Source: Epithemia pelagica
Lineage: Eukaryota > Protista > Bacillariophyta
Reading direction: 5' to 3'
DNA: 64,000 bases
NCBI GenBank assembly: GCA_946965045.2
Contig: OX337241.1
Coordinates: forward strand, 2,294,001 to 2,358,000
The position numbers were made by a program, and so were the translations under genes. Below, piece by piece: positions 912 through 18,676 of the stretch (positions are counted from its first letter, which is position 1; each line of letters starts with the position of its first letter). The notes under the pieces were generated by a model. It worked only from the letters and a program-made list of their open reading frames with translations, was not told the DNA's origin and did not search any database.

Positions 912-1174
912 TGTTGTTTGTTGTCTCTCGGGGATAGGGATGTAATCCTTATAATGGTATCGAAATCAAGTCAAACGCAGTTGGACGAGATGGTTGGTTT
1001 TTGGAAAATTGGATGAGACTAATGTGCGATTAACATAGATTTACTGTAGTGGTATTAATGTTAGTGTTAGTGCGTCGGCTGAAGTTCCATAGGCCGCTCA
1101 TTTTTTGGTGGGTACCATCCGACGAAAAAAGGGGCTGTTCTTTTAGGAGCCAAATTTGGGAACCTATTGGATGT

Positions 1175-1251
1175 CTGAGAGCGAGACCAACGGCGGGGAA
1201 TGTTGCTTGGATGACCATTGGATCATTTCCGACCGTTGGTCTCGCTCTCAG
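1175..1251. repeat. 19-bp perfect inverted repeat (hairpin) with 39-nt spacer
   Basis: CTGAGAGCGAGACCAACGG (1175-1193) is the exact reverse complement of CCGTTGGTCTCGCTCTCAG (1233-1251). Confidence 0.9.
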
Positions 1252-2176
1252 GGGTCCAATTGATCCGTTGAAACGGGTCCAAGCTAGGGGCTACCCTAAA
1301 TCTCCAAAATTTTGGCTGATGGTAGTTTTTCATTTAACAAAAGGGCTTCTCACTATTTGTGTCATAGTAAATGAAGGCGCTTCTGGCCACGTCTCGGCAA
1401 GGCCGGCTACGACCGTTTACACCGTTAGCTGGTATTGATCGCCATGCCATCGGTTTCTTTCCGTTAGGCCTACTGTTTCGTTCATATATTGCTTGCTCTT
1501 CTGACTTCTCATCCAATCCCAACAGCGACCAACGATTGAAAAACTGGGACCTTTCATCAGTCATGGCTGGAGTAACGTTCTCGAACCACCATGGCACGCC
1601 AGCAATAAATTCAAAGTGGCAGTTCGATAACTATATCGATCTACCCACACTGTCCTCTTGAGATCATCCCTATTCGTAGCCGCCTTTTCGACTAACATGT
1701 CTCTACCCATTTGTTACCGTCATCTATTACATCCTTCTTTCCTGCTAAACTTTTGGTAATCTGCTCGCTTTCTTGCTTCGATTTTTTTCACCACATACAA
1801 CATTCAACAATCATCTTCTCCTCCAACCCCGTATGCTCACGCTAACAACCACTTTTCTCCTCCTGCTTCCAACTTTTCCATACGTAGCCTTCATCTAACC
1901 AACAATCTTTTCATCCCATCCTACTAGACGCAATAAAAACAATACCTAATGCATGTTCGTCCGATGCTGTTGATCATCGTAAAAGTTGCCTATGTAATCA
2001 CAAAATTAGAAGCGACGTTTTTCCCGTAAGAAGATTTCAGATAGAAATTTTTTGATTTTTGAAGTCGCTGATAGGGCCCCTACCCCAAGACGCTCCGACA
2101 TTGCGGGGCGATCCACGCGGTCGCACCCCGTATACCAAGAGAGGGCATATGCGCAATGCGTACGCGCAGCGCGAGA

Positions 2177-2290
2177 TAGCGGCGTTCCTTTAACGGAGAT
2201 CGTGGAGTTTATTTCCCTTTGGCTCCGCTAATCCGCTATCCGGATAGCGAGGCCAATCAGAAAGCCCCAATACGTCAGCATAGCGGCGCT
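2177..2290. repeat. Cluster of ATAGCG/CGCTA motifs including a 16-bp perfect palindrome
   Basis: CGCTATCCGGATAGCG at 2234-2249; ATAGCGGCG near 2177 and 2280; CCGCTA near 2225. Confidence 0.6.
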
Positions 2291-2851
2291 CGGGTGGAGA
2301 TAGCCTTATAACTAATACGAGAAATAATAGTGTCCCAAAACCCACGACATACAACCTATCAGTAGCTATCACTGGATCCATGTTGTCATCAGGAGCACTT
2401 ACGGATAGGAGTCGAACCTAAAGCACTAGGAGTAGGTAGCTAGTGAACCCTTACTCCACTTAAGTCTATAATAATAGAGCATAGGAGTAGACATCAAAGA
2501 GTCAAAGTGGTTGTTCCAACAGAGCATGGAGCGCAGAACTACAAGCAGTTCCGTTTTCGTTCCAATCTCCTGTACTCGGTACGTTTTTGGTGTCGTGGGA
2601 TGCCATATTTGAAATGAAGAACGTCTTTAACTCTGTAGCTGTTGAATGAAAGGAAAAAGGTGTACCTCGCACATCGCTCCATTGATTCGGACGCTCCCAC
2701 ATAATGAAATGCCACAGACGTAAACGAACATATGAAGTCTCCGAATTCACAACTCACACTAGACTGCTAGTTGATCTGATTGCATCGAACTTCATCAAGC
2801 AGTCCGCAATTTATACGCGCTCCTACACATTACATTGCACAGTCTGTTCGT

Positions 2852-3370
2852 TCACAGGTACGGAACTGGAGCTGCGAAGGTGAAACTTTCCTCATGCATT
2901 TGTAAGCCAAATCTTTCCAACATTAGCATACCCAAGATATTTCCTGGTTGATGCGTGTGTGGTGTGATGCGGACGGCTGACTTTCTCCCGGCAGTGGTAA
3001 TAAAAAGAGACCCCAAATCATCTGTTTCGATGCGACCGGCCGCTTCCAGCACGCTCATAGCCGGTTCCGAGAGATAAATATGAATTGGTGCACCTGTATC
3101 GCAAACGAAGGTGTACGGGACAAATCGATCGTCTCCGAGTCGCAGAGAAATGCGAACAAGCATTCGGAAACGTCCCCGCCGTGAATGGCGGATGAACTCT
3201 GGTGTAATAGGAGTTGAGCTGACAGTTCCGTCATCAGGATGGGCCATGTTGACATAATTTTCCGGAAAATCGTACTCTTGCAAAAGCAGATCAGCGTCTG
3301 CCGCATCACTCTGATCAACCATCAGTACTGATGCTGACGTATCTTCGAAGGGCTGCGGCATTCGGCTCAT
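2852..3370 (-). CDS. Stand-alone retropepsin-like (clan AA) aspartic protease, 172 aa
   Basis: Catalytic-type FVCDTGAP motif and downstream NILGMLML (hydrophobic-hydrophobic-Gly) motif typical of single-domain aspartic proteases; intact intronless ORF. Confidence 0.7.
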   Translation of the reverse strand: MSRMPQPFEDTSASVLMVDQSDAADADLLLQEYDFPENYVNMAHPDDGTVSSTPITPEFIRHSRRGRFRMLVRISLRLGDDRFVPYTFVCDTGAPIHIYLSEPAMSVLEAAGRIETDDLGSLFITTAGRKSAVRITPHTHQPGNILGMLMLERFGLQMHEESFTFAAPVPYL

Positions 3371-3840
3371 GGTATGGCGTCCGATAGGAGTGGACGGATA
3401 GAGTTCGTAATATCTGTCTTAGTCTGTTGTGTTTTCCAAGACCCTCATAGCATCGTATGATCACGACGATCCGTCAGACCGCCATTCACAAGGAAATTCG
3501 GGAATCTTGGCACGAATCCGAGATCGTCTCAAGGTTTATCATGTTGGTGTCCGCAGCCAATTTGGGTCGATGGTGGTGGACTGTCACTTTCTGTCCACTC
3601 TTGCAAAGTCATACGCCCAATCGGTTAATCTCTCGGATATTCGAAGAATCAAAACCATCGAAGAGCATTACGGCCTCTCGAGGTGTACGCGTCGCGATTA
3701 TGGACGCTGGGGAGTTGTTGAAAAAATGTCGTTCGCAGATCTCACGAAGCGTGAAGCGTGAACATCTCTGCATCTTTTGTCGGGCGGGTACAGCGAGAAG
3801 ATTCGAGAGTGCTTCTGTTGCTTCTATTCGTTGTCCTACC

Positions 3841-4630
3841 ATGAAGATAACAATCATATTCCTGCTGTTACTATCTGGGATCTCCCTGGCCAAAGGCGGA
3901 ACCAATGAAGAAGGAGTGGAGTTTTTGAAGGCGAACAAGGCTAAAGAAGGGGTCATTGAGCTGGCCTCTGGTTTGCAGTACAAGGTCTTGACGAACGGCA
4001 CGGGCGTCTACCATCCATTGGTTGGTACCCCTTGTTCTTGTCATTATCAAGGCCAATTGATCGACGGTACCGTGTTCGACTCTTCGTACGAGCGAGGAAG
4101 CCCCACAACATTTGGTAGGTCGAATTGAACACGCTTGTAAAATGTGATGCCTCTTCTTTTGTTTCATCGTTGATTTCCTTTGTGTTTTTCGATTACCAAT
4201 AGCGCCAAACCAAGTGATCAAGGGGTGGACGGAAGCAATGCAACTCATGGTTCAGGGCGATAAATGGGAGATGTACATTCCGAGTGAGTTAGGTTATGGC
4301 GACGGTGGAAGTCCTCCCAAAATTCCCGGTGGATCTGTCCTTGTGTTTCAAATGGAAATAATGGAACTGCTCGGTCCTGGTAAAATGGCAATGAAATGCA
4401 ACGTGGAAACTGGAGATTTATGCAGTGAGAAAGAATTGGCCTACATAGCCAAGGTAAAGGCATGGGAAGACGTGTCGAAAGGACCTAGTGAACTGGCTCG
4501 ACTACGAAAGATTATTGCCAGCTCAGAGAAATCGGTGAAACCAGAATTGGTTTCGTGGATGCAAAATCGGATATTTCTCCTGGAAAAAATGCTTGGAACA
4601 GCTTCAGGTGAACCAGAACAGGAACTCTAG
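3841..4630 (+). CDS. FKBP-type peptidyl-prolyl cis-trans isomerase with signal peptide and helical C-terminal extension; exons 3841-4114, 4203-4630
   Basis: MKITIIFLLLLSGISLA signal peptide; FKBP motifs SGLQYKVL, HYQGQLIDGTVFDSS; the GT-AG intron 4115-4202 restores F-APNQVIKGWTEAMQLM; GYGDGG-P-IPGGSVLVF; C-terminus EQEL resembles an ER-retrieval signal. Confidence 0.93.
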
Positions 4631-5076
4631 GTCGATTGTCCTATGAGCTTCATGTTTCCCTGTGCATTCTTGAGAGTTTCATGACTATTTAATCTAACAC
4701 GATAACCCTATACCATTCATTTCACGGTAGGTTCTTCTTCCATAGGTAGGTTAGAAGCGTATTCAGTATCCACCAAGAACCTGACCTACATACAAAGCTC
4801 TTTTGTTGTTGATGACAAGAAAAAAAAAGAGGCATTTTGGGGAAAACATGGCCCACCGAAAGATCCCCACCGTCGCCGACGGAAGATCGCGCGGTGGGAG
4901 TATGACCCCAATGACAGTTTTGTTAGCTTTGCCTTGCGACCGCTGGAGTGTAGTATCCTGTGGATTTCATTTTTGGCCACTTCATCCACAGCAACCTTTG
5001 GTGAAAAGCAATAAGCAAAAGAGGCAACCAAATTGCCACCAACGCATCCTCACCCAGACATTCAGTAACCCACATA

Positions 5077-6604
5077 ATGGCAGACAATGCAGACGATGAT
5101 TTGGTCGAATACGACGAAGAAGAAGTAAGGAAGCTGTTGCATAAGCGCTCGTCGTGATCACGTGAAATTTTGGTATTGCTCCGTCGTGTTTGGCGCGTTT
5201 GTACTGACGGGTCTCGGCTTGCTGCTCCTAGGTCGTCGCGGATGTAGCTGGTGGGAGCAAATCGAAAGATGGCAGTAAAAAGGGACACTATGTGGGCATT
5301 CACGCATCTGGATTTAAAGATTTCCTGTTGAAGCCGGAGTTGTTACGGGCCATTGTGGACGCAGGGTTTGAGCATCCATCGGAAGTGCAACATGAATCCA
5401 TTCCTCAAGCAGTCTTGGGTGGGGATATTGTCTGTCAAGCAAAGTCAGGAATGGGGAAGACCGCAGGTACGACCATTTTCGGGTGACAGGAAGAAGTTCT
5501 ATCGTATTTCTCGTGTGGAATGATGAATTCAATTGCCTCATTGCCCGTTTGCCATGCAACCTACAATTTCTGCACCCTCTAGTCTTTGTATTGGCGACTT
5601 TGCATCAACTGAATCCAACGGCATCAACTGGAGGAGAAGGTGATGAAGAGGAAAAGAATGATGTGCAGGTTCTCGTTTTGTGTCACACTCGCGAATTGGC
5701 CTTTCAGATTGCCCATGAATATGAACGTTTTTCCAAGTACCTTTCTTCCATTAAGACTGCGGTGTTCTACGGTGGTGTGAACATTAAACAAAATCGCGAA
5801 ATCCTTAAGAAGGATCACCCTCATATCGTCGTTGGAACGCCTGGCCGTATTTTGGGCTTGGCCAAGGAAAAAACTCTCAAACTCAGCGGAATCAAGCATT
5901 TCGTCTTGGATGAGTGTGATCGAGTGTTGGAGTCGCTCGATATGCGTAGAGATGTGCAAGAAATTTTCCGCATGACGCCTCATGAAAAACAGGTGTTGTT
6001 GTTTTCTGCGACGTTGTCAAAGGAAATCCGACCGGTCTGCAAAAAGTTTTGTCAAGATCCCATGGAAATTTATGTCGACGACGAAACCAAACTCACTCTT
6101 CACGGGTTGCAGCTTTATTATGCCAAACTTGCCGAGGCAGAAAAGAACCGAAAACTGAACGACTTGCTCGATGCACTCGAGTTTAATCAAGTGGTGATTT
6201 TTGTTTCAAAGGTCGCTCGTGCCAAGGAGTTGAATCGGTTATTGACGGAATGCAACTTTCCTTCCATTTGCATTCATGCGGGGATGAAACAAGAAGAGCG
6301 GATTTCTCAGTACAAATCCTTCAAAGAGTTCAATGCCCGCATCTTGGTCGCAACCGATTTGTTTGGACGTGGTATTGATATTGAACGTGTCAATGTTGTG
6401 ATAAACTATGACTTTCCCGATGATTCAGACCAGTTCTTGCATCGTGTCGGACGTGCAGGTCGATTTGGAACGAAGGGAATCGCCATCTCCTTTATTAGTT
6501 CGGAGCCCGACCAAGAGATCCTCAACAAAGTCCAGTCACGTTTCGAAGTCAACATTCCTGAACTTCCGGATGAGATTGACATGTCCACTTACATGAGCAC
6601 GTAA
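5077..6604 (+). CDS. UAP56: DEAD/DECD-box RNA helicase UAP56/SUB2 (DDX39); exons 5077-5124, 5232-5466, 5583-6604
   Basis: [45 protein letters not shown] restored by splicing, DECD motif, [14 protein letters not shown]; two canonical GT-AG introns. Confidence 0.97.
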
Positions 6605-6965
6605 TTGGACAGTGAACGTTAGACTTATATGATTTAAGGGGAAGAGGAGGTTGGTGGACCGGTTGATAATGAAATGTCTAGGTAGTATAGGCTTATTGCA
6701 CTTTCACTTCAAAAAGCGAACGCTGACATGCTGTTTAAGTGGGTATGGGCAAAAGTTACAGGCCAATCAACGTTGCCCTACAGCAGCAGAGACGGTGATG
6801 TTTGTGAGACCAACAAATCTCGTGAGAAAGACGCAATCTCGTCCTTCATAGATGACCCAGAGTTCACTCCAAAGTTAACAACTTCGATTGTAGTTGAAAA
6901 AGGAGAGGTAGTTCGACCCGCAATTTTTTGGAGTCCACGTCATTCCACGGCGATATTTCTCACTG

Positions 6966-7940
6966 ATGATAAGACCAGTCCTAAGGATAAGTCGTAGAAG
7001 TCCCCAAACCCCAACACACAAACACACAAACGACGATGATACTTGTCGTGTGGACTCGTTTGGTTCCATGTCGCCGCTACTAGTAAAGACAGGTCGAACC
7101 ACCCGCAATGAGTTTCCCACCATTCGTAGCAAAGCTGTATGGATGACCCTCTTCGTGTTTGTGTGGGTGTTCCTATGTCAGATCCTTTTAAGTGTGCGTC
7201 TTTCTCAAAGCATGTGGACCCCGTTCGCAACTGTTATGAACAATCAAGCTTTCACAACGGCCGCAGATCCTTCCGCACAGGACGTCGACAATCGGACATC
7301 TCAACGTGATCCGGCAACCGTTGCGAATGATACATCCATTGGGGAGCACAAAGAGTCCTTGCCGGTCCCTTCTGCTCGTTTGCGACTGGATTGGACGCAA
7401 TTGGACCTGCACTCTCCCATGGCCAAACGAATCGCAGCTCATCAAAGTTCTTGTACCTTAGTATGCCCGAGGCAACATTTCGATGGCGAAACTGCTGCGG
7501 AATGGGCAGTGATTTGCACCTGTGGTCCCTTGCCATGTGCAGAGGCATGAGGCTCGGCCAGCGTCTCATCTCAGCTCGACCATGGAACTTTCGGGACCAA
7601 CTTACTTGCCCCAGCAACGACAACTCGTCCACGACGTGCTACTTTTTACAATCCGAGGATTTGTGTCCCATTTCCGATGCGCACGCCGCTGCCAAGAACA
7701 ATAATATCACAAGCTATCCTTCACGCTCTCAACTCAAGATCAGACAGATTAATCCTGCTATACACGATGCATGCTTGTCGACACTGCAAAAGGCAAATAT
7801 CACCAAGGAAGAATTTCGTGGGTCGGCCATGGAGTTTCTGTTTTCAAGAATTTCTTCCAGAGTTGTAGACGCTGCCCGTTGAGAGACTCCCACGTGTCTT
7901 TCCACCTCATGGCATTGTGCCACCCAACTTGATAACCGTA
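6966..7940 (+). pseudogene. 5' half of a GT23/FUT8-like (alpha-1,6-fucosyltransferase-like) gene, frameshifted
   Basis: TM anchor (TLFVFVWVFLCQILLSV), AHQSSCTL then a frameshift at 7461-7465 to PEATFRWRNCCGMGSDLHLWSLAMC; a second +1 shift near 7880 gives ARERLPRVFPPHGIVPPNLITV, ending just before the HIRWGDK motif found at 18677. Confidence 0.7.
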
Positions 7941-8247
7941 GACATAATAATGTGTGTAATATTTTTTATAGCAAATAGCTTGTTATATTCTAGAATATTA
8001 GTTCTGGCGAGGCCCATGCTGTAGTGCGGCCGATTCCAGGCAAGTATATCATGTCGGCATATTCTTAATGTTGGGACTGCTTCGTATATCTTCCCCAATG
8101 CAGAGCTTACCAAATGGAGCACGTGATCCATCAATAATCAAAAGTTAGAGGAAAGATCGCTAGCTTAAAGAACCCAAGAAAGAAAAGCAAGCGCGAGCGG
8201 ACCGACCATGAGCAGAGTTCTGTTCGTCGTGCGTGACGAAGAGGAGG

Positions 8248-8368
8248 CGGGTTGTGGGCCTCGGCAGGGCTCGTTCCCAATGGACATTACCAACAGACAA
8301 TATTCGGTCCCGTCATCCACGATTTCCTTGGTCATGTATCGGCGGCTGCTGCCGGCCTTGGGCTCGAT
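8248..8368. repeat. 121-bp exact direct copy of 9688-9808 (coding fragment of the neighbouring gene)
   Basis: Base-for-base identity at an offset of 1440 bp. Confidence 0.95.
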
Positions 8369-9553
8369 TGTGACATTTGCGATTCGGATTCGGACTGTTG
8401 CACGGCATGTCTTGATGGATAGAAAAGCTTCTCCGCCTCAAGTCTAACGCAGTGTCTTTGTATTTTGTATGTTATTCCACAACAAGGACATTTTCAACGG
8501 AGCTTGTTGAAATTGCAATAGTGTTGCAAATTGATAGGATATTTAGGACCAACCAGTGTGGTCTTTGGAATCAAAGCTGAACTTCTACCTGCTTTATCCA
8601 CACGAATACGAGATACGCGTGCATCACAGTTCTCGCTGCTAGTGTGCTTGTGTTTTTGTGCTTGTGTAACAGCAGTTTCGAGGAGAAGAAGGAGAAGTAG
8701 CGTTCGTGTGGATGAAAGAGATACAAAATGATTCCCTCTTTATTATGGGTTGGGCGCTTCTGTGGTACATGTCGCCCTGCGTGTGGATAAAGGCAGACGC
8801 GGGAAGGATACATCCGAGAGTTGTTCTTTTAGGTCATTTCTAGTTTTTCTAAACACTTAAGTTACGGCCTCGCTGGAATGTGTGGATGGCGCGGCATTTG
8901 AAAGAGGAGAAAACCGTTGGAATTAGGTCCCCAACTCCCCAATCCTGAATCCTTATACAGCCGAAAGCCACAATTCGAGCACACAACGAACACAAACACA
9001 ACACTTCACTACTAGAGAGTAGTCCCATGACATGACTATCATTGGCAATTGGAGTAATAACAGCTTGCTGATGAGTCGAGAAGCCAATGGAGCGTTCTCC
9101 TGCACCTTGACGAGACAATGCTGGTCGGCGGCATAAAAGGAGGAAAGGACGGTTTCTGGCTAAAGGCCAAGGCCAGTTCCACGTCCGACGTGGGATATTG
9201 ATCACAGGCCGGCGGACAAGGGCCGCTGTCGGGACACGGAGGAGGACGACATGTTGGTGGTGGTTGTATGGGATATATGGTACAGTTTTCTTGATGATCG
9301 AACGGCGTAATGTTTTATTGACTCCGCCTCTCGTCTTCTGTGAGAGATGATGATTGATGCGTTCGGATATACACTACCATCCTATCACCATTGAAGGCGA
9401 GTTCTCAACAACGCTGTACTATATATGATCAAACTAGGTAGTCCTTGAGCTGCGGTTTTGGCAGTAGTACATCGCAGCGCCTCATGCACAAACACGCAAT
9501 CGTTATTCAAACAGATATCATCATTCATCATCCATGTTACTACAAGGCCATGA

Positions 9554-10471
9554 CTAGAAGAGCAAGGCCGACGACAAGAACAACAATGTGGTCGTCACGC
9601 CAAGAACTGTCACTCGGGAGGCACTCGAGTCAGGAGATGGCGCTGGTGTCGTCGGAGCCGCGGTAGGCTCCAACAACTTTCCTCCTTCGGGTTGTGGGCC
9701 TCGGCAGGGCTCGTTCCCAATGGACATTACCAACAGACAATATTCGGTCCCGTCATCCACGATTTCCTTGGTCATGTATCGGCGGCTGCTGCCGGCCTTG
9801 GGCTCGATCCAGTCTTCCCGTGTCAGGGAAGGAGGGAAAGCTTGTTTGTCGTCGCCGCAAAGATCCAGGTCCTCTCCGAGGATCGCGTGGATGGAAATCC
9901 CATCCTCGTACCCGCCCGTAATGTTCTTGTCGGGTGAATTCCATGATTCGCACGCAAAGGATACCTTCAGCGTCGAATTGGTGGTGGGAAGCGTCATTCC
10001 CAAGGAGGTACAGGCTCTCGGTTCGACTCTGAAATAGGAATTTCCGGAACCAAACTCATCCTCCTCGTCTGGGTCTTGGTTGCTTCCGTCAGTAGCCACT
10101 GGACAGGAATTCTGCTCAGCAATCAAATCCTCGCAACTTCCCTGGGCGATCTTCATGGCCACGAATCCCGTTCTGTAGTACGGCTCGCCCTGTCCATTGA
10201 TATAGTAGGGGATCGATTCGTTTCCCACGGCTCGTTGGAACTCGGGGTCGGCTTCCAAGCCATCGCAAAGGGGTTGATCCAAAACGTCAGGAAAGCGATA
10301 GGGAGGGTCGCTGCGCTGGGCCAAGGAGCACGCTAAGACGTGGGGAACCAAGGAATTCGTTCCGCAGGTCGTGTCGGCCTGGCAAGCACATCCCGGGACG
10401 TCGTTGTCGGCATTTATCGTCGTGGCTAGTAGTAGTGCCAATGTGAGGTAATGAAGGTTGGGCGTTTGCAT
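9554..10471 (-). CDS. Secreted, probably GPI-anchored or membrane-tethered Cys-containing surface protein (~305 aa)
   Basis: MQTPNLHYLTLALLLATTINA signal peptide, multiple Cys, Pro/Thr-rich linker PTAAPTTPAPSPDSSAS and hydrophobic C-terminal tail; start taken at the in-frame ATG at 10471 (ORF track extends to 10603). Confidence 0.8.
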   Translation of the reverse strand: MQTPNLHYLTLALLLATTINADNDVPGCACQADTTCGTNSLVPHVLACSLAQRSDPPYRFPDVLDQPLCDGLEADPEFQRAVGNESIPYYINGQGEPYYRTGFVAMKIAQGSCEDLIAEQNSCPVATDGSNQDPDEEDEFGSGNSYFRVEPRACTSLGMTLPTTNSTLKVSFACESWNSPDKNITGGYEDGISIHAILGEDLDLCGDDKQAFPPSLTREDWIEPKAGSSRRYMTKEIVDDGTEYCLLVMSIGNEPCRGPQPEGGKLLEPTAAPTTPAPSPDSSASRVTVLGVTTTLLFLSSALLF

Positions 10472-10946
10472 CACGGTTGGTTGCTGTAGTTTAAGTTTGA
10501 GGCTTGATGAAATTGTTTTCATGAAATAATGAGAACAGGAAGTCAATGAGAACAAAATGTCATCTTTGACGTTGAAATGCTCCCGCGGAAAGGTATCGCT
10601 CACTCATAATCGCTCATAGCATTGAGGCGCGAATGAACCGATTCGTGCCAAAATCAATCGTGCGCTCTCGAAGGAACTCAAAGGAACATACACGGGAATA
10701 GCGAAACTCGCTAATGATTAGCGAGAATTTAGCGACGAGCCAGTAAAATATTGGAAAAATTAGAAATGCTAAGTAGACGTTTTCCTGTGGCATATACATA
10801 GGTAAAAATAGAAATATTTAGACGAGAAATCAAGACTAAAGGCAATATTCTCTTTATCATGTGTTGATATTATGCCAAATGTTCGGAGTTGGTTGGGAAC
10901 ATACTTATAGTATTGTATCTAGATACTACAGAAGAAAAAAGTTTTC

Positions 10947-11053
10947 CCGAATGTCTGTCAAAAAGCTACCTGAAACTCCGAATGTCTGTCAAAAAGCTAC
11001 CTGAAACTCCGAATGTCTGTCAAACAACTACCCGGAAAGTCTGTCATTTCACT
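10947..11053 (+). repeat. 31-bp tandem repeat (2 full copies + 1 degenerate) carrying the GTCTGTCA motif
   Basis: CCGAATGTCTGTCAAAAAGCTACCTGAAACT at 10947 and 10978, partial at 11009; further GAAAGTCTGTCATTTCACT at 11035-11053. Confidence 0.9.
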
Positions 11054-11607
11054 TTTTCATGCCTGAATCAGGGTTGTGAAGCTACTTATTCATATTTCAA
11101 CTGATCTGACGTAATTTGGTCATTAAATTCATATATCATATATTTTTCGAATTAATTCTCCCATTTTTCCTGCCATGAATTATTCTAAGAATTAATTCCT
11201 CATATCTCTCGCCATACACATATATTCTATAATGATATTACCCACCATTCTAGTAGGGTAATATCCCCCCACATTCCTCACGACCTCATTGTCTGGCCTC
11301 CGTTCTTGACCAAATTAATCCTCATCCTACGAATATGACATCATTTACTGACATTTGTCAGTTAATAGTGTCATCGCCGCAATCACTGTATTTACCCTTA
11401 GTAACTGACGCAAAGATAGACACTGCCCCCCTCTGCGAATCTTATTATTGAAAACAAACAGATGAGAAATGGATCACATGGTCACTGCACCTCCAAAGAT
11501 TGCGTACCTCTACCTTCAACAATCAGCCAAAGTTCCATCGCAGGATCAGACTCACTCTCCCACCGATCCCTGATCACTAGTTGGTGAAGTTATTGACAAC
11601 AAGAATC

Positions 11608-14600
11608 ATGTCACCTTCGTCGAAGAAGAAGAAGACTCCTCTTCCAAAGCAATCGGCAGCCGTTTCTGCAAGAAACAAAATCGTTCAGGAGGAGATCGAA
11701 GACCAAGTCAATGCCAAACAAGAATTCATCCTGTCTGAAAAAGAACTTATCCCTGTCCACAAGGGGAAGCCTAACCTCTTATTCTCCAACAGCCCCTCGA
11801 AACGTTGGGATTGGGTTCTCCATGTTGATTGGCAAGCCCTATTCAAGTGGGTATGGGATGGCACCGTGAAGGATCTTCCAGCCTCTTTTCGAGGCTTTAC
11901 GAAAATCCATGATATCATGGGTGAGTTCTTGGGAGAACCACCCGTACAAGACCAAGAATACGATGCCGATGGGAATCCTCTCCCTATTGTTGTTGAAGGA
12001 GAACTTTCCAACAAGGAGTATAAGGCCAAGTACAAGTTACTCGCTCACCGAATGGTTCTCTGTCCGCTCTGTTTTAAAAACCCCGATGTCCCTTTGTTTA
12101 AATGTTGCATTACCTGCAGCGATGAGAAGCCATCCAATGTGAAGCAGCACATTGACAAGCATCATGGGGGCGACGAAAAAGTATTTGGAGTGTCAAGTGA
12201 AGAGAAGTTGAACCAATTTACACTAAAAGGGTTCACATCCGACCTATCTCCTCGCAAGGAAGCCGTTGGACAATTAAGACAGCTCATATACGAGTTTGTA
12301 AATGATTGTTGTCTCCCCGCCAATACCGTGGAAAAACCCCAGTTCCGGGAACTCCTCCGATATGCTTTTCAAAATGGTGGCCAACTAAAGGACACCCGTG
12401 CCGAAGTCATGAGCCGCCGCCAGGTCACCAAGCTTCGAATGGATTCATACAAGGACTATGTCTCAACTGTTGCCTCTCTAGCAAGGAACGTCCGAGAAGA
12501 ATACAAGACCCTATGTGGCAAAGAGATTGCGTTTGCCACGGTCTGCCACGACATTTGGCAGGCGCGACGTCATGATGTCCTTGGTGTCACTCTCATGTTT
12601 GCTGACCCACGCAATAGTGTTGTATATCGAATCCCCATTGGCTTGGCTGAAACTAAGGGCCATGCGGCCGTGGATGTGGCTAACCTAACACACTCCCTAC
12701 TCATGTCTGTCGGTTTCAATCAAGACGACCTTGTGGCTTCGGTAAATGACAATACATCAGCTGCTGTCCTTGCCGGTAAATACATTGTCGGAGATCATGC
12801 CAAGGTGGGCCGATGCGATATGCATCGGGCCGAATTGGTCCTCAAGCACGCCACAGGGCTTGTGCAACGGTTCAGGAAAGGTGTTCTTATCGATTCTTTT
12901 CCAGAATTTTGTGAACTGTATGGAAAATTCAAGAAACTGGCTGGGTGGGTGACTAGCAAGCACGCATTTCATCGTTGGGAGAAACTCAAGAAGAAGGCCG
13001 AAGAACTGGGGTTCACGTTGATCTTAATCCCCATGCCAAACGACACCCGTGTTGGTGGATGTGTCATTCTCATCCAAGCTTTACTGCGGAACAAATGGTT
13101 TTTCGATCTTTATGTCCTGACATCAAAACTCAGTGACCCTACTTTTGTTTCTCTATATCCTACTCAAGACGAATGGGACCTTCTGGCCCAATATGAAGGT
13201 ATCCTCAGTCCTCTGAAGGCTGTTGCTCTACAGCTCCAAACCGACGAACCTGGCGCCAGTTCGGCCACGCTTCTGGAGATTTATCTCTCTCATTTCAAGA
13301 CTGAACGAATGAGGATGAGCAAAGTCTCCTGCGTTCCAGTCAACGAGGCGGATCTTGAAGAAGACGAGAAATGGGATGCATCTGCACCCATGAGTGAGTT
13401 GAACGCATTGCGAATTGGAGTGTCTTACAATGAATTGGGTGATGGTCCCAAGAAGCTCATTCGCCGGATTCTGCATGAGTACCGCATCTATCTTTTGGAT
13501 ACAGATGAGGATGCGTTGAAAGCAGTTTGCTGCAATCCTATGTTGGCGAATATTTATGACGACATGTTCCAGTCTTTGGCCATGTTCGATTCCGAAAAAG
13601 TAAGGAAGGCTCGTCGTATTTTCTTAGACGACATGATGTCCAAGTTCAGCAACGCTAAGGCTTCACCTCTTGGCGCGCTACTTGAAAAACAACGACAGCA
13701 ATCCCAGGGGGAACCAACTACTCCACCCAAAGAGACTACAGCAACTCCCCCTACCAACCCAGGCAACACAGGATCTTCACGAAAGAAGAAGGAACGGTAT
13801 GAAGAAGAAGATGTTTTTGAGTCCATACGCAGAACAAGAGAACTCAAAGAACAGGCCCTTCTCCAGATCACTGGAGCGGCCTCTATGGGAGGCACAGAAA
13901 CAGAGGTTCTGGTGGCATTAAAAAATGCTTGCACAGAAGCCTTCGATTCCTTTAAACGAATGTGTGGGGTCCATATTGACAAGCAATGGGCCAAGGTCAT
14001 TGCAGACTATCCAACAGAGAAATATTCAAACGAGGCACCAAAATGGAACGAACAGGAGAAGACTGCTTTTCGAAAAGCCTGTTTGAATTCGAATTATTGT
14101 CAGATATCAAAGTATTTCGATATCATGGCCTGGTGGAGCGATCACAAGAGAGAATTCCCTCTTATGTATGTGATGGCAATGATATGGCTCACAAAGCCGT
14201 CCACCAATGCGTTCCAGGAACGCATTTTTTCGTTAGGAACGTGGTTTCAACAGAATAAACTTATGGCGAATATGCTGAAGAAGCATTATGAAATGAGGAC
14301 AATGGATTTTCTAACCAGGTCACTTAAGCGGGAGATTATCGCCAGAGAGTTGGAATTGCAACGAAATACTAAACAACAAATATCACACTACGTTGGAATT
14401 GGTAACTCCGAGACGTCTGATACAGTGAACGAGGCAGGCACAACTATGGATTCATCCACAAAGGAGAAAGCGGCCACCAAGGATTTCTCTACAAGACAAA
14501 CTGCTCTTGTTCAGATGAGTGGCATGAGGGATGCAACTCAGAGTTATGTGGAGTACAACAAGAAAGCAGATGCAGAGAAGGGGCTAGTCACAAACGATCA

Positions 14601-15378
14601 GTCCATTGGTATGACGTACTTTGAGGAACTTTCTGAGGACGAGGATGAACGCTCTCTCTTGTCTGGTGGATTGGAAACACCTGAAGTTTGTGCTGAAATG
14701 AGCAAAGAAAAACGAATTCGTGAAGCACAACGTCTTTCCCAAATGGTGAGAGATGGAAGAAAGAAACCTATTGAATGGGACACAGTGAAGGTGGTTCGTT
14801 TTGAGCGTCACCCAGACGATGACTCGGTCCAACATTCATCGGAAGACGAAAGTTTTGGTGACGAAGACAGTGATGCGGCAATGAATGAAGTGTTTGATCT
14901 GGAATTGAAAGGATTAGAGGAAGCTGTAGTACAAGAGGCAATTGACCTGACGGCGTCTCAGACCGAGCAGAGGGATAGTGACAGGGATACATCTGGGAAT
15001 AAGAGAAAGACAGATGCTCAACGTAGAAAGAAAACCAAGCAGCAAAAACTTTTGCCGACTAGACAGTCACCTCCTCGTCAAGCCAAAAACAAAAGCCGTT
15101 TGAAGCAGGCATCTATGAAACAAACATCTCTGTCCCTGTCAGGTGGACACGAAGAAAGGCAGAAACAATCTCAGTCGAGAAGCCAGGTGAATGCCAAGAA
15201 ACATGCTAAAGGAAGAAAGGGACAACCTAAGGACGACAGGAACTATGAGGATGAACAACAAGATGATACCAAGAACGATCAGAGTATTGAGGATGTCTTA
15301 CAGGAACTGGAGTCGGACTCGGAGGATGAAGAACACGGGAATGAAGAACACGATGATGAAGAAGTGTATGACGACTAA
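11608..15378 (+). CDS. hAT transposase with N-terminal BED-type zinc finger and long charged C-terminal tail
   Basis: CPLCFK...SNVKQHIDKHH (BED-like); putative DDE residues VCHDIW, VNDNTS and STNAFQERIFS; CDMH (CxxH) motif; NDTRVGG at the position of the usual TRW motif; uninterrupted ORF (track 11581-15378, first ATG 11608). Confidence 0.9.
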   Translation: MSPSSKKKKTPLPKQSAAVSARNKIVQEEIEDQVNAKQEFILSEKELIPVHKGKPNLLFSNSPSKRWDWVLHVDWQALFKWVWDGTVKDLPASFRGFTKIHDIMGEFLGEPPVQDQEYDADGNPLPIVVEGELSNKEYKAKYKLLAHRMVLCPLCFKNPDVPLFKCCITCSDEKPSNVKQHIDKHHGGDEKVFGVSSEEKLNQFTLKGFTSDLSPRKEAVGQLRQLIYEFVNDCCLPANTVEKPQFRELLRYAFQNGGQLKDTRAEVMSRRQVTKLRMDSYKDYVSTVASLARNVREEYKTLCGKEIAFATVCHDIWQARRHDVLGVTLMFADPRNSVVYRIPIGLAETKGHAAVDVANLTHSLLMSVGFNQDDLVASVNDNTSAAVLAGKYIVGDHAKVGRCDMHRAELVLKHATGLVQRFRKGVLIDSFPEFCELYGKFKKLAGWVTSKHAFHRWEKLKKKAEELGFTLILIPMPNDTRVGGCVILIQALLRNKWFFDLYVLTSKLSDPTFVSLYPTQDEWDLLAQYEGILSPLKAVALQLQTDEPGASSATLLEIYLSHFKTERMRMSKVSCVPVNEADLEEDEKWDASAPMSELNALRIGVSYNELGDGPKKLIRRILHEYRIYLLDTDEDALKAVCCNPMLANIYDDMFQSLAMFDSEKVRKARRIFLDDMMSKFSNAKASPLGALLEKQRQQSQGEPTTPPKETTATPPTNPGNTGSSRKKKERYEEEDVFESIRRTRELKEQALLQITGAASMGGTETEVLVALKNACTEAFDSFKRMCGVHIDKQWAKVIADYPTEKYSNEAPKWNEQEKTAFRKACLNSNYCQISKYFDIMAWWSDHKREFPLMYVMAMIWLTKPSTNAFQERIFSLGTWFQQNKLMANMLKKHYEMRTMDFLTRSLKREIIARELELQRNTKQQISHYVGIGNSETSDTVNEAGTTMDSSTKEKAATKDFSTRQTALVQMSGMRDATQSYVEYNKKADAEKGLVTNDQSIGMTYFEELSEDEDERSLLSGGLETPEVCAEMSKEKRIREAQRLSQMVRDGRKKPIEWDTVKVVRFERHPDDDSVQHSSEDESFGDEDSDAAMNEVFDLELKGLEEAVVQEAIDLTASQTEQRDSDRDTSGNKRKTDAQRRKKTKQQKLLPTRQSPPRQAKNKSRLKQASMKQTSLSLSGGHEERQKQSQSRSQVNAKKHAKGRKGQPKDDRNYEDEQQDDTKNDQSIEDVLQELESDSEDEEHGNEEHDDEEVYDD

Positions 15379-15531
15379 CATGAAGAGAGGTATAAACGAG
15401 AATGAAAACAAAAACGAGCAATAGCAGTTGAGCCAAGTGAAGCAAATTGATGATGAGAGATATTGACAGTGAAAACAATTTAATATTAGGAACGTAATAC
15501 ATGTACTGCAGTAAGAATCAACTTTCAACAA

Positions 15532-17406
15532 CTAGTACGACTTTCTTTTGTCCATGTACTTGTCAAACATAGAAATGACCTTCTTTTTGAAAAAGGGACA
15601 GAAATTTTTGCTCTTTGCAAGGCGCTCCCGCACCTTGGATCCTTCACCAGATACAGCGATCTGACTCAACGATCCCAATAAAGGGTTGATGTCTCTCCAG
15701 AACTTTTGGGGAACCCATGATTCCAAATGTTTTGAACACTCATAAGCTTCACATTTCGTGGGTACCCATCCAAGATTTTGGGACCATCGCATCACGTGGA
15801 TGTCGGAGGGAATTCCTTCGGACCGATCAAAGGAAGCTTCGATTACAATGGCAGCAGTCTTGTACCCTATACCGAGCAGAGTGGTAAGCTCCTGGATAGA
15901 AATATTCGTCGGAATAACTCCATTGTGTTCTTGGATAAAGTAATCCGCGGCATTCACAATGTGTTCAGCATTTTTGTAAAAACGTCCCGGTTCGGAAAGA
16001 ATGGAGCACAAGGCGTCCATGCCGTATCTTTGTGAAATGTCAATCACCGCCGTTGCGGATGTCAATCCAAACGAGAAAATACGAGGCATCACAGTGCTAA
16101 GTTGTGCATCGGAGGTACTTGCACTCATGCATATTGTCATGAGGAACATGAAGGCTTTGTCTGCCTGTGGGTCGTCTGCAGTGATAGAAGAGTCGACCCA
16201 GTCCTCCCAAGAATCCCGAGGGACGTTGATGCCATCCTTTTTCAAACTTGTCCAGAAGTTCAGAAGAGAGTAGAACTGAAAAGTTCGTTCAAGCAATATT
16301 TCTGGAAATTTGTCACAATCAGGAATTGATACATGACTGTCACATGGTGGTTTGACGATAGCTTTTTCCCCAGGCATGTGTCTCTTTGTTCCACTTTGCA
16401 CGTATTTAATGGCTGACTTTGAGCGTGAAATCGACCCAAGGAATGCCGCTATTTTTTCATTTCGAGATCTCGTTGAGTACGAGTGCAATGCAAATTGATT
16501 GTGGAAGAGCTTTTGTTGCTTTCTGGTAGGAGGAGAGGCAATATCTGTCGTGTCTGATGGAAGATTGGTTGTTGTACTTGTGTCAGTAGAACGTTGTGGA
16601 GTTTTGTAGGGGGATGGTAGACGGTGGATTGTTTCTTGTGGAGGAGTATATTGTGATGCGGCAGGCAAAATGGTATCAATTTGGGCATGAGCAGAAGACA
16701 TGTTCAACAATACATGATGTTCAATCAATGATAGGAAAGGAGATACCGTTGGAGGATTGTATAAATCGGTAGGAAAAGAATCATAGTCCACTGGAATATT
16801 TGGAACGTCGATGATATTGAAGCCCTCCACTCGTTGGGCGCTTGCATGGACACCAATGAGTGGCTTCTTTCGGATCATCCAAGATGTAACAAGAGTGCTG
16901 GTTGAAGTTGTCGGTGATATGGCTAGCTGGTTGTCGATGTAATGAACACAGTCATCCAGTACCTTGTTCCGAATGATTGAAAATTGTGTTTTACAATTTA
17001 GAGACAGAATGACCGTCGTACAGGTGATGGTCTGATCCACCATGAGAAGTTGTTCTGTGTTGCTTGAAGAAAACCTGTAAGTGTCCTTGTCAGTTTCTTG
17101 GAAAATGGCTTGGTATACGATACTCGAAAGCAAATCGAGTTGTTGTTGGAAAGAAAGAGTGGGAATACAACATTTGTGTGTAGGGGGGTCATGAGGAGGA
17201 CATGAAATCTGACCACCAACGCGAATGAGCCAGTGAATGGTTTTTTGTTGGATTGCCTGAAAAATCTCGGAAACAGGACGATTCAGGATTCCATCTGTTT
17301 CTTTCAAATCAATCAATAGTGCATAAAGAGAAGGGTTGCAATGCATGACATATTTGGGACAGCATTTTGATTCGAAAATGACATTTGGGTGGGAAGCATC
17401 ATCCAT
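15532..17406 (-). CDS. Transposon-encoded protein with C-terminal endonuclease III/NTH1-like HhH-GPD DNA glycosylase/AP-lyase domain (624 aa)
   Basis: FMFLMTICMSASTSD, GRFYKNAEHI...EHNGVIP, HhH LLGIGYKTA (Lys codon 15859-15861), GIPSDIHVMR (Asp codon 15802-15804), LESWVPQKFWRDINPLLGSLSQ; these match by eye the conserved EndoIII/NTH1 blocks; the C-terminal four-Cys Fe-S motif is reduced to one Cys (FCPF). Confidence 0.88.
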   Translation of the reverse strand: MDDASHPNVIFESKCCPKYVMHCNPSLYALLIDLKETDGILNRPVSEIFQAIQQKTIHWLIRVGGQISCPPHDPPTHKCCIPTLSFQQQLDLLSSIVYQAIFQETDKDTYRFSSSNTEQLLMVDQTITCTTVILSLNCKTQFSIIRNKVLDDCVHYIDNQLAISPTTSTSTLVTSWMIRKKPLIGVHASAQRVEGFNIIDVPNIPVDYDSFPTDLYNPPTVSPFLSLIEHHVLLNMSSAHAQIDTILPAASQYTPPQETIHRLPSPYKTPQRSTDTSTTTNLPSDTTDIASPPTRKQQKLFHNQFALHSYSTRSRNEKIAAFLGSISRSKSAIKYVQSGTKRHMPGEKAIVKPPCDSHVSIPDCDKFPEILLERTFQFYSLLNFWTSLKKDGINVPRDSWEDWVDSSITADDPQADKAFMFLMTICMSASTSDAQLSTVMPRIFSFGLTSATAVIDISQRYGMDALCSILSEPGRFYKNAEHIVNAADYFIQEHNGVIPTNISIQELTTLLGIGYKTAAIVIEASFDRSEGIPSDIHVMRWSQNLGWVPTKCEAYECSKHLESWVPQKFWRDINPLLGSLSQIAVSGEGSKVRERLAKSKNFCPFFKKKVISMFDKYMDKRKSY

Positions 17407-17877
17407 GGTGCTCTCTTAAAACACAAGGCGATGAGGCACAAGCAGCAACGTGAGTTGTGTGAGTACTATTTTCATCTATTGTGGTGTCAGTCGCGAAACA
17501 TGTAATGGGTGAAATATTCAGCGTAGGTAATAATATTACGTAATTTATGGTAATTAATTTATTAAATTAAATTACTGCAAATGAATGAAGGGGTAATTCC
17601 GTTGGGTGAATAAATGAGTCAAATTCATTCTTGAAAGGATTCGCCTCTAATTTATTAAAAAAATTAATTCTCTTTAAAATTTGACAAAGAATATATTACG
17701 TAAATGATATTACATGAACTTGGGAAGGAACAATTTTTGGAAAACGGAATTCATAACGTTTGGTTATTTTGAATATAATGATAAAACTTAATTCTTCATT
17801 ATTATGTAATGGAATAAATTACGTTAATTCTATTCATATAAGAGGTTATGGTAATTCACAACTCTGGCCTGAATAGC

Positions 17878-18111
17878 GAAATGACAGACATTCGGGTAAA
17901 CATTCGTTTTTAGAGTTAGGGTTAAAACTTTATGAAGTTGAAGTGGCACTGATAAGACAAGAAGGGCTGAAGTAGAGTGCCCTTTTATTATTGATGGGTG
18001 CATGTGGAAGAGCACCTGTGACATGGAGGGCAACCGGATGGTCTGTCCGTATGTCAGCCTACATTTTGAAAGTTTATCCGAAAGTCTGTCATGAAAGTCT
18101 GTCATTTCACT
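17878..18111. repeat. Right-hand continuation of the GTCTGTCA motif array interrupted by the hAT element
   Basis: GAAATGACAGAC (17878-17889) is the reverse complement of 11039-11050; GAAAGTCTGTCATTTCACT at 18093-18111 is identical to 11035-11053; another AAAGTCTGTCAT lies immediately upstream. Confidence 0.85.
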
Positions 18112-18676
18112 CCTCTCAACATACACATACTCCATGTTGGATCGATACTCACCTGGCCGAAATTTTGTTTGATCGATTCGACTCAAACTCCAAACATTCC
18201 TCCATCTTTCTTGTATTGAATCTGACTTGATATATTATTATATGGAATGTTTGTTTGCTAGAGTAGACGGTTGCATATCCAAAAGATACCGTCGCCTTTT
18301 AGCAAACGAATTTCCTCCACTTCGATCCATGATCCGTCCACACTACCACCAGCGATTCCTCAAGGGCTGCCTCTCGGTGGCTAGGAGAAGCTATGCAGTC
18401 AAGAAAGCACATCGATTTCGCCTTGCAAACCCGCGCTCCTATCATGCCACTGCGTGTGAAAAGGCATCCTCGAGAACTTCTTGGGCGGACCTGATTGCTG
18501 CCAAGATTGGCAACGACGAGACATTCGAAAAGCCCTCCTGGAGCGAGGAATGGAAACGCCTGGGCCTCGGTGCCGACCTGGTCGAGGACAATGGAAGCAG
18601 CAATGCCAATGACGACGACGACAAGTATTTTCCGAAACACCTCTTTTTTGTCCAGCTCGGTTTTGGGGTCGACCAG

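What the first reader, a model, noticed from the sequence alone, without database searches (positions are those of the whole stretch)
11069..17866. Intact hAT transposon carrying its own EndoIII/NTH1-like DNA glycosylase
Seen: a fully delimited element (12-bp TIRs, perfect 8-bp TSD GCCTGAAT) with exactly two long uninterrupted, convergent ORFs, a BED-hAT transposase and a 624-aa protein ending in an HhH-GPD domain. The HhH Lys (GIGYKTA) and the Asp (PSDIH) are both present, 19 residues apart as in eukaryotic NTH1. Established: hAT elements normally encode only a transposase; HhH-GPD enzymes include the plant 5mC demethylases DEMETER/ROS1; diatoms methylate transposons; some transposons encode anti-silencing factors (e.g. 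VANC of VANDAL elements). Inference: the second ORF is functional cargo, either a base-excision anti-silencing enzyme acting on the element's own methylation, or an AP-lyase/repair helper for the hairpinned flanks left by hAT excision. I do not know of a described hAT plus glycosylase system. The intact TSD and two open ORFs in an otherwise decayed neighbourhood suggest a recent insertion.
Basis: partly seen in the sequence, partly recalled or inferred. Interest (0 to 1): 0.92.

Follow-up and report, generated by a model that had tools for sequence, protein, structure and literature searches.

The report
Diatom hAT transposons carrying a glycosylase
A recently mobile jumping gene in a diatom always carries, next to its cutting enzyme, a second conserved gene for a DNA base-removal (repair-type) enzyme; no such cargo turned up in the literature I could search, and it may help the element escape silencing.

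Summary
Window 11069-17866 is an intact 6,798-bp hAT element: CAG...CTG inverted ends (11/12 match), a perfect 8-bp target duplication, and two convergent ORFs. A second copy elsewhere in the genome is 99.96% identical, and identity stops exactly at the ends. At least four insertion sites and the empty-site allele appear in DNA reads.

The second ORF is not a one-off capture. Five further diverged elements in this genome (six subfamilies in all) have perfect ends and duplications enclosing the same gene pair. A sediment-metagenome contig carries the pair too.

Synonymous sites are saturated, while the glycosylase domain stays conserved (dN/dS at most 0.19). The catalytic Lys and Asp are invariant in 29/29 family representatives. 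The family is one clade on a long stem outside cellular NTH1, and none has the Fe-S motif.

AlphaFold and Foldseek give an NTHL1/EndoIII fold. The N-terminal ~240 aa is an internally duplicated domain with no known fold relative. RNA contigs cover only this gene, weakly.

A related hAT element in another diatom lacks the gene, so it is an accessory rather than core transposition machinery. Anti-silencing base excision is my best guess for its function; this is untested.

The scan's first readers noted two similar pairs elsewhere in this genome. I found no published hAT-plus-glycosylase system.

The parts
11061..11068 (.). Left copy of the 8-bp target-site duplication, GCCTGAAT
   Evidence: The empty-site contigs in X1 and X2 carry a single copy.
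11069..11080 (+). Left terminal inverted repeat, CAGGGTTGTGAA
   Evidence: Identity with the second copy L004 starts here.
11069..17866 (.). Complete autonomous two-gene hAT element, 6,798 bp
   Evidence: 99.96% identical copy at another locus, with its own 8-bp duplication.
11149..11198 (.). Subterminal palindromic GAATTAATTC motifs at 11149-11158 and 11189-11198. These are candidate protein-binding sites.
   Evidence: in the 64-kb window the motif occurs only in the element's subterminal regions (0.33 matches expected by chance); all nine AATTAAT/ATTAATT sites lie within 500 bp of the ends.
11608..15378 (+). hAT transposase ORF, 1256 aa from the first ATG. It has a BED-like Cx2C...Hx4H at residue 152, a DIW motif at 314-316 and ERIFS at 871.
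   Evidence: and 29 for homologues.
15379..15531 (.). 153-bp spacer between the two convergent stop codons
15532..17406 (-). Partner ORF, 624 aa: a duplicated novel N-terminal domain, a disordered linker, and an NTH1-type HhH-GPD domain without an Fe-S cluster
15637..16224 (-). HhH-GPD glycosylase/AP-lyase domain (about aa 395-590). The Lys516 codon is 15859-15861 and the Asp535 codon is 15802-15804.
16477..16686 (-). Low-confidence, Pro/Ser/Thr-rich linker (aa 241-310)
   Evidence: pLDDT below 50
16687..17406 (-). N-terminal domain (aa 1-240): two tandem ~110-aa alpha/beta modules, each with a W[LM]IR motif. No fold relative was found.
17661..17670 (+). Subterminal AAATTAATTC motif at the partner-gene end
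17855..17866 (-). Right terminal inverted repeat (TTCACAACTCTG on +)
17867..17874 (.). Right copy of the target-site duplication, GCCTGAAT

Best explanation
This is one recently active copy of a family of autonomous hAT DNA transposons in a diatom. The family has two obligatory genes inside its inverted ends, each reading inward from one end. One is the hAT transposase. The other is a 570-640-aa protein: an NTH1-derived HhH-GPD base-excision domain with the catalytic Lys and Asp intact and the Fe-S cluster lost, fused to a fast-evolving, internally duplicated N-terminal domain of unknown fold. Shown: the element's anatomy and mobility, co-inheritance of the two genes through deep divergence, purifying selection, the fold, and conservation of the catalytic residues. 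Inferred: the protein is an active bifunctional glycosylase/AP lyase that works for the element rather than in transposition chemistry. Most likely the variable N-terminal domain brings it to the element's own DNA. There it would excise a modified base (5-methylcytosine, or an oxidised or deaminated derivative), so that base-excision repair resets silencing marks at the element's promoters and transposase-binding ends. That would make it an anti-silencing enzyme.
For: Anatomy and mobility. At least four insertion sites, the empty-site allele, and about three times the flank depth. Same gene pair inside perfect ends with perfect 8-bp duplications in the window copy and L004 and in five more diverged elements, L002, L003, L006, L008 and L009; the pair also in the truncated L001 and on metagenome contig L007. 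Selection: pS 0.65-0.89 (saturated) against pN 0.17-0.38 in the HhH domain, and dN/dS 0.19 for the closest pair. Partner and transposase distances co-vary (Mantel r 0.875, p 0.001). Lys516, Asp535, Asp433, His537, Asn574 and Gln582 invariant in 29/29. NTHL1 hit at E 1.4e-19. AF2 mean pLDDT 82, with Foldseek to 7rdt at E 1.5e-7, TM 0.69, rmsd 2.4 A. Separate clade, SH-aLRT 100. Accessory rather than core: a related hAT element with perfect ends and duplication in another diatom assembly (L010) has no trace of the gene. From established knowledge, Hermes-type hAT transposases also suffice for transposition on their own. The N-terminal domain evolves faster than the catalytic domain (pN 0.27-0.57), and subterminal motifs differ between subfamilies; both fit sequence-specific targeting. 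Elements are slightly CpG-poor relative to their flanks (0.64-0.91 against 0.79-0.98). RNA-like contigs cover only this ORF. Precedent: fungal DNA transposons, including hAT7, carry TET/JBP dioxygenases (PMC12730594).
Against: No substrate is known. By sequence the domain is closest to NTH1/EndoIII, which act on oxidised pyrimidines. The PDB profile search returned no ROS1/DME or MBD4 entry at E up to 1. Methylation of this genome or of these elements was not measured, and the CpG deficit is small. DNA binding by the N-terminal domain is pure inference, since it has no fold match. Expression evidence is weak: depth 2-5, one run, contigs without strand. All full elements come from one genome plus one environmental contig.
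Confidence: 0.5

Rival explanations
1. The partner is a transposition or repair cofactor. It binds the element ends or the donor or target DNA, and its AP-lyase/dRP-lyase or nicking activity helps process the hairpinned donor flanks, the gapped 8-bp target duplication, or lesion-marked target sites.
For: The gene is kept in every full element of this clade examined in this genome. The catalytic residues are invariant. It co-diverges with the transposase. Two-gene DNA transposons with an essential non-catalytic partner exist, for example PIF/Harbinger (established knowledge).
Against: hAT transposition needs no such factor elsewhere (Hermes and Ac; established knowledge). A related element with perfect ends and duplication, from a clade with 205 member transposase sequences, lacks the gene. 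AP-lyase chemistry neither opens hairpins nor fills gaps.
Confidence: 0.2
2. The partner is an anti-mutagenesis enzyme. It removes deaminated or oxidised bases (T:G or U:G from 5mC or C deamination, or oxidised pyrimidines) from element DNA, which slows the mutational decay that methylated or host-edited transposons suffer.
For: It has NTH1-type ancestry with an intact active site. Elements show only a mild CpG deficit with TpG/CpA excess. One of the three differences between the two young copies is a C/T change at a CpG.
Against: A diffusible repair enzyme would benefit the whole genome, so selection to keep it within the element would be weak unless it is targeted. The host presumably has its own NTH1. 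Three differences are too few to show any mutational spectrum.
Confidence: 0.15
3. The partner has a non-catalytic role. The HhH-GPD domain serves only as a DNA-binding or bending module, or as a transposase-recruiting or nuclear-import partner, like the Myb-like protein of Harbinger elements.
For: HhH motifs bind DNA non-specifically. The Fe-S cluster is lost. There are family-specific changes at positions that are otherwise conserved, for example Asn479 where 91/97 cellular NTH proteins have Lys.
Against: The Lys and Asp needed only for catalysis are invariant in 29/29 representatives despite divergence to about 30% identity. Fe-S-less active NTH enzymes exist, for example yeast Ntg1 (recalled knowledge).
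Confidence: 0.1
4. The gene is a one-off or neutral passenger: a host NTH1 gene captured by chance in this copy, with no function for the element.
For: Pfam scores the single sequence below its cut-off. DNA transposons do pick up host fragments.
Against: The gene is present in six diverged subfamilies, forms a monophyletic clade outside cellular NTH1, shows strong purifying selection, and co-diverges with the transposase.
Confidence: 0.02

Closest known systems
Classical hAT elements (Ac, Hermes, Tam3, Tol2)
   Same: 8-bp target duplications, short CAG-type inverted ends, subterminal repeats, and a transposase with the hAT C-terminal dimerisation domain and the DxW and ERxFS motifs.
   Different: Classical elements encode only the transposase. 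This family always carries a second, convergently transcribed enzyme gene, and its transposases are unusually long (1,200-1,365 aa).
Fungal DNA transposons carrying TET/JBP dioxygenases, including hAT7 (Kojima 2025, PMC12730594)
   Same: DNA transposons, some of them hAT, carry within their ends an enzyme of DNA-base modification or removal, and that enzyme is proposed to erase silencing marks.
   Different: The enzyme class differs (Fe/2-oxoglutarate dioxygenase there, HhH-GPD glycosylase/lyase here). The host is a fungus rather than a diatom. The fungal cargo moves between transposon superfamilies, whereas here it co-diverges with a single hAT clade. hAT7 elements make 7-bp duplications.
NTH1 / endonuclease III (human NTHL1 7rds/7rdt, E. 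coli Nth 2abk, yeast Ntg1)
   Same: Same fold, HhH motif with catalytic Lys, GPD loop with Asp, and the best sequence and structure matches.
   Different: No Cx6Cx2Cx5C Fe-S loop (0/30 family sequences against 49/97 cellular). About 400 extra N-terminal residues with a novel duplicated domain. Family-specific residues (Asn479, Pro533, Gln435). Encoded by a transposon. Separate clade on a long stem.
DEMETER/ROS1 5-methylcytosine glycosylases of plants
   Same: HhH-GPD enzymes with a catalytic Lys and Asp that descend from the Nth lineage and act in demethylation. They show that such a specificity shift is possible.
   Different: No detectable specific similarity: no ROS1 entry appears in the PDB profile search at E up to 1. 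There is no Fe-S cluster and no DME-specific domain. DME/ROS1 are host genes, not transposon genes.
VANC anti-silencing proteins of VANDAL (Mutator-like) elements (Hosaka 2017, PMC5735166)
   Same: An accessory gene inside an autonomous DNA transposon. It evolves fast, is subfamily-specific, and is proposed to act on the element's own non-coding ends to reverse methylation.
   Different: VANC is not an enzyme of base excision and is unrelated in sequence. Its action has been shown experimentally, whereas here it is only inferred.

Membership tests
hAT superfamily DNA transposon | 8-bp target-site duplication | tested here: met
   Perfect 8-bp duplications in the window copy, L004, L002, L003, L006, L008, L009 and L010. 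The empty site carries one copy.
hAT superfamily DNA transposon | Short terminal inverted repeats of the CAG.../...CTG type | tested here: met
   CAGRGTNNNGA(A) ends, 11-12 bp matching (up to 21 bp in L006).
hAT superfamily DNA transposon | Transposase with the hAT C-terminal dimerisation domain (PF05699) | tested here: met
   E 4.5e-7, 30 bits against a 21.4-bit cut-off. The same region matches Hermes weakly.
hAT superfamily DNA transposon | Complete DDE catalytic triad in an RNase H fold | tested here: inconclusive
   The DIW and ERIFS motifs align with Hermes DLW and ERTFS, but the alignment is weak (E 0.02-0.03). The second Asp was not located, and the transposase structure was not predicted.
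hAT superfamily DNA transposon | N-terminal BED zinc finger | tested here: inconclusive
   A Cx2C...Hx4H pattern is present at residue 152. Pfam gave no zf-BED hit at E up to 0.1.
hAT superfamily DNA transposon | Evidence of transposition | tested here: met
   Two 99.96%-identical copies at different loci, at least four flanks in the reads, and a precise empty site.
Endonuclease III / NTH1 (HhH-GPD superfamily) | HhH-GPD fold | tested here: met
   In the AF2 model, residues 310-624 have pLDDT mostly above 85. Foldseek best hits are NTHL1 and EndoIII, with E down to 1.5e-7 and TM 0.69-0.77 by target.
Endonuclease III / NTH1 (HhH-GPD superfamily) | Catalytic Lys in the HhH motif and Asp in the GPD loop (bifunctional type) | tested here: met
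   Lys516 and Asp535 are invariant in 29/29 family and 97/97 cellular sequences.
Endonuclease III / NTH1 (HhH-GPD superfamily) | C-terminal [4Fe-4S] cluster loop, Cx6Cx2Cx5C | tested here: not met
   0 of 30 family sequences have the motif, against 49 of 97 cellular hits. The tail after Gln582 has a single Cys.
Endonuclease III / NTH1 (HhH-GPD superfamily) | Groups within cellular NTH1 orthologues | tested here: not met
   The family is a separate clade, SH-aLRT 100, on a stem of 2.14 substitutions per site. HMM scores are 167 bits or more within the family and 103 or less for cellular NTH.
Endonuclease III / NTH1 (HhH-GPD superfamily) | Glycosylase/AP-lyase activity on oxidised pyrimidines | not testable with these tools
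   Needs biochemistry.
DEMETER/ROS1 5mC glycosylases | DME-type glycosylase domain with an Fe-S cluster, plus the DME-specific flanking and C-terminal domains | tested here: not met
   No Fe-S motif. No ROS1/DME structure among the PDB profile hits at E up to 1. Pfam found only HhH-GPD.
Transposon-encoded anti-silencing factors (functional class: VANC, TET/JBP cargo) | Gene lies inside the element's ends and is inherited with the transposase | tested here: met
Transposon-encoded anti-silencing factors (functional class: VANC, TET/JBP cargo) | Reduces methylation or silencing of its own element | not testable with these tools
   No methylation data are available. There is only a mild CpG deficit and weak transcription.

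The most novel reading that the evidence does not exclude
A transposon lineage has independently turned an NTH1 repair glycosylase into a targeted DNA demethylase or base-editing eraser. The fast-evolving duplicated N-terminal domain would read subfamily-specific subterminal motifs, and the Fe-S-less HhH-GPD domain would excise 5-methylcytosine (or another silencing-linked base) from the element's own ends. That would be a second, non-plant origin of 5mC glycosylases, used as an anti-silencing weapon.
Probability: 0.3. Interest if true: 0.92.

Novelty: new variant of a known kind. Interest (0 to 1): 0.8.

Why it matters
DNA transposons that carry enzymes acting on DNA marks are rare. The main case is TET/JBP in fungi, and none in the literature I could search carries a DNA glycosylase.

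Here the cargo is clearly part of the element. It is conserved, under purifying selection and catalytically intact, and it has been inherited with the transposase through deep divergence. The element is still moving.

That gives a tractable system for three questions. How do transposons fight methylation-based silencing in diatoms? Can NTH1-type enzymes evolve new base specificities outside plants? What does a new, duplicated N-terminal domain do, and is it a DNA-targeting module?

A compact, Fe-S-free, possibly sequence-targeted glycosylase would also interest people who build epigenome or base-editing tools.

Tried and rejected
- **Other copies in the window:** none found by tblastn or blastn. 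There was one weak 55-aa hit at 46489-46653, which I did not follow up.
- **Right end of L001:** not found; that copy is truncated near position 16200.
- **Ends on metagenome contigs L007 and L012:** none found. The 480 bp after the transposase on L012 shows no partner homology and is too short to judge.
- **Fold of the N-terminal domain:** nothing above noise. Foldseek against PDB gave best E 0.57, AFDB clusters best E 0.2, VIA-align wide best Z 5.6, and ESM Atlas features at most 0.56.
- **L010 cargo region:** tblastn and hmmsearch --max found no partner remnant.
- **Basal family member P0057:** the contig table shows the same convergent layout, but no DNA was served.
- **Nearest cellular sequence P0099:** it comes from a third assembly, not this host, so the host's own NTH1 was not identified.
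- **dS estimates:** saturated in all but one pair, so only upper bounds on dN/dS are possible.
- **Literature:** five searches for hAT or transposon plus glycosylase, HhH-GPD or endonuclease III found no such system.
- **One-off capture reading:** rejected.
Full report
**1. The observation**

The stretch 11069-17866 is bounded by CAGGGTTGTGAA on the left and by the reverse complement of CAGAGTTGTGAA on the right (11/12 match). It is flanked on both sides by GCCTGAAT.

It holds two long convergent ORFs. One runs 11581-15378 on the + strand (1265 aa from TTG, 1256 aa from the first ATG at 11608). The other runs 15532-17406 on the - strand (624 aa). A 153-bp spacer separates the two stop codons.

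Pfam places ORF1 in the hAT family through its dimerisation domain (E 4.5e-7, above the cut-off). ORF2 matches HhH-GPD only weakly as a single sequence (21.6 bits against a 26.2-bit cut-off).

Lys516 (GIGYKTA) and Asp535 (PSDIH) are present and lie 19 residues apart.

**2. Boundaries and mobility have independent support**

The window is part of an ENA assembly contig (L005, reversed). A second copy on another contig (L004) is 99.96% identical over exactly 11069-17866. It differs at three sites, all within the transposase ORF, and has its own perfect duplication, TTGTTCAC.

Three DNA-like runs of the same organism tell the same story:
- Element depth is about 440-480, against 127-187 on unique flanks.
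- Loose ends at the right terminus show at least three further flanks.
- Contigs in two runs join position 11068 directly to the sequence that follows 17874. This is the precise empty site with one copy of the duplication.

The insertion is therefore young and still polymorphic or heterozygous.

**3. The second gene belongs to the element family**

A word-indexed protein search found only three relatives, at 58%, 41% and 32% identity. Each lies tail-to-tail with a large hAT transposase gene.

Following the transposase relatives and more distant partner relatives gave further loci. In all, six diverged subfamilies enclose exactly this gene pair between perfect 11-12-bp (or longer) CAG-type ends and perfect 8-bp duplications:
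- the window copy and L004
- L002 (ATCGACAC)
- L003 (GTTGGCAG)
- L006 (GTACTAAC)
- L008 (GTCCGCAC)
- L009 (AGTAGAAT)

Other loci add to the picture:
- L001 is a truncated copy.
- L009 has a second copy directly adjacent.
- An 8.7-kb sediment-metagenome contig (L007) has the same pair.
- A Logan contig carrying the most basal family member has the same convergent layout, but no DNA was served.
- Two other first-reader notes describe similar pairs elsewhere in this genome.

Cluster membership indicates dozens of gene copies.

The host is a diatom. A conserved neighbouring enzyme has only diatoms among its top named hits apart from one insect-labelled entry, at 63-67% identity.

**4. Selection and ancestry**

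Between subfamilies, synonymous sites are saturated (pS 0.65-0.89). Non-synonymous divergence in the HhH-GPD domain is only 0.17-0.38, similar to the transposase. The closest pair gives dN/dS 0.19. Partner and transposase distances co-vary (Mantel r 0.875, p 0.001), which fits joint inheritance.

An exhaustive profile search found 41 clusters (at 50% identity) with E below 1e-30. After a clear score gap comes the general EndoIII/NTH1 background. The nearest cellular hits are ordinary eukaryotic 'endonuclease III homologs'.

In a maximum-likelihood tree the 29 domain-complete family members form one clade (SH-aLRT 100) on a stem of 2.14 substitutions per site.

Conservation within the family:
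- Lys516, Asp535, Asp433, His537, Asn574 and Gln582 are invariant in all 29.
- None of 30 family sequences has the Cx6Cx2Cx5C iron-sulfur motif, against 49 of 97 cellular sequences.
- The family has its own fixed residues, for example Asn479 where 91/97 cellular enzymes have Lys, and Pro533.

**5. Structure**

A four-sequence profile hits human NTHL1 at E 1.4e-19.

AlphaFold2 with a 25-sequence alignment gives mean pLDDT 82. The model has a folded N-terminal alpha/beta domain (residues 8-240), a disordered linker (240-310) and a confident C-terminal helical domain. Foldseek matches the C-terminal domain to NTHL1, EndoIII and MIG-type structures (E down to 1.5e-7; TM by target 0.69-0.77).

The N-terminal domain, modelled alone (pLDDT 80), has no match above noise in PDB, AFDB clusters or a Foldseek-independent search. 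It is an internal duplication of a module of about 110 aa with a W[LM]IR motif (hhalign probability 93%, E 3e-7).

**6. Expression**

Run X4 behaves as RNA. The neighbouring gene reaches depth about 76,000, and a loose end carries adapter sequence.

Within the element, X4 has only five low-depth contigs (2.3-5x). All lie inside the partner ORF (15985-17366), and none lies over the 4.7 kb of transposase sequence. This shows weak transcription of the partner. Because these are assembled contigs, absence of transposase RNA is not proven.

**7. A comparator without the gene**

In another diatom assembly, a transposase 38% identical to the window's (its 90%-identity cluster holds 205 sequences) sits in a 7,065-bp element. 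That element has perfect 12-bp ends and a perfect duplication. The 3.3 kb downstream of its transposase has no long ORF and no partner homology.

The partner is therefore lineage-specific and not needed for hAT transposition in general.

**8. Mechanism**

*Shown:* a mobile two-gene hAT family whose second gene is conserved, under purifying selection and structurally an NTH1-type glycosylase/lyase with an intact active site.

*Inferred:* the protein is catalytically active and serves the element in its dealings with the host genome.

I favour targeted base excision that reverses silencing marks, for four reasons:
- hAT chemistry needs no such enzyme.
- The gene is absent from a related element.
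- The N-terminal domain evolves fast (pN 0.27-0.57), while subterminal motifs differ between subfamilies.
- Transposons carrying TET/JBP enzymes give a precedent (PMC12730594).

Ac transposase binding is known to be sensitive to methylation. This is recalled knowledge that I did not check here.

The weak points are that the substrate and the genome's methylation are both unknown. The elements' CpG deficit relative to their flanks is small.

The rival readings are a transposition or repair cofactor, an anti-mutagenesis repair enzyme, and a purely DNA-binding partner. None of these is excluded. A neutral one-off capture is excluded.

**9. Novelty**

Five full-text searches found no transposon-encoded DNA glycosylase. 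I classify this as a new variant of a known kind: an autonomous DNA transposon with an accessory DNA-mark enzyme. The cargo class is new, and the N-terminal domain has no recognisable relatives.

Noticed in passing
window 10938-11060 and 17875-18118: The element sits inside a high-copy repeat. There are three tandem 31-nt units (CCGAATGTCTGTCA...) on the left and inverted copies of the same motif on the right. DNA depth here is 800-13,000, against about 150 on unique sequence. This may be a foldback or MITE-like element, and the hAT copy is nested in it.
   Followed up: partly
window 9373-10550 (ORF 9554-10603, - strand): The neighbouring 349-aa ORF has a Pro/Thr/Ser-rich hydrophobic tail. It is covered at depth up to about 76,000 in the RNA-like run X4, so it is among the very highly expressed genes.
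   Followed up: no
L003 11935-15936: In this subfamily copy the transposase is split over three reading frames, while the partner ORF is intact and the ends and duplication are perfect. The partner's 90%-identity cluster has 19 member sequences.
   Followed up: partly
L009 1-5427 and 6467-13392: Two family elements lie side by side: a second partner-plus-transposase pair lies directly upstream of the complete one.
   Followed up: no
L001 16435-16527 and 17910-18056: Short fragments of another partner gene (71% identity over 31 aa) and another transposase (62% over 50 aa) lie just beyond the truncated end of the L001 copy. This looks like a nest of decayed family members.
   Followed up: no
L010 4950-12014 (other diatom assembly ERZ25042306): This related hAT element has perfect 12-bp ends and the duplication AGCACCAC. 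It has a 905-aa transposase, then 3.3 kb with no long ORF and no partner homology. A piggyBac-type DDE_Tnp_1_7 ORF and a Copia RVT_2 ORF lie nearby.
   Followed up: partly
window 46489-46653 (- strand): There is a weak tblastn match (29% over 55 aa, E 0.002) to partner residues 130-184, in the second N-terminal module. It could be chance or an old remnant.
   Followed up: no
window 16375-16470 (partner residues 312-352): A conserved motif (TR...SRSK..I.Y.....RHMPG..P.LK) lies between the disordered linker and the glycosylase domain. It is modelled with pLDDT 80-96 but has no assigned function.
   Followed up: no
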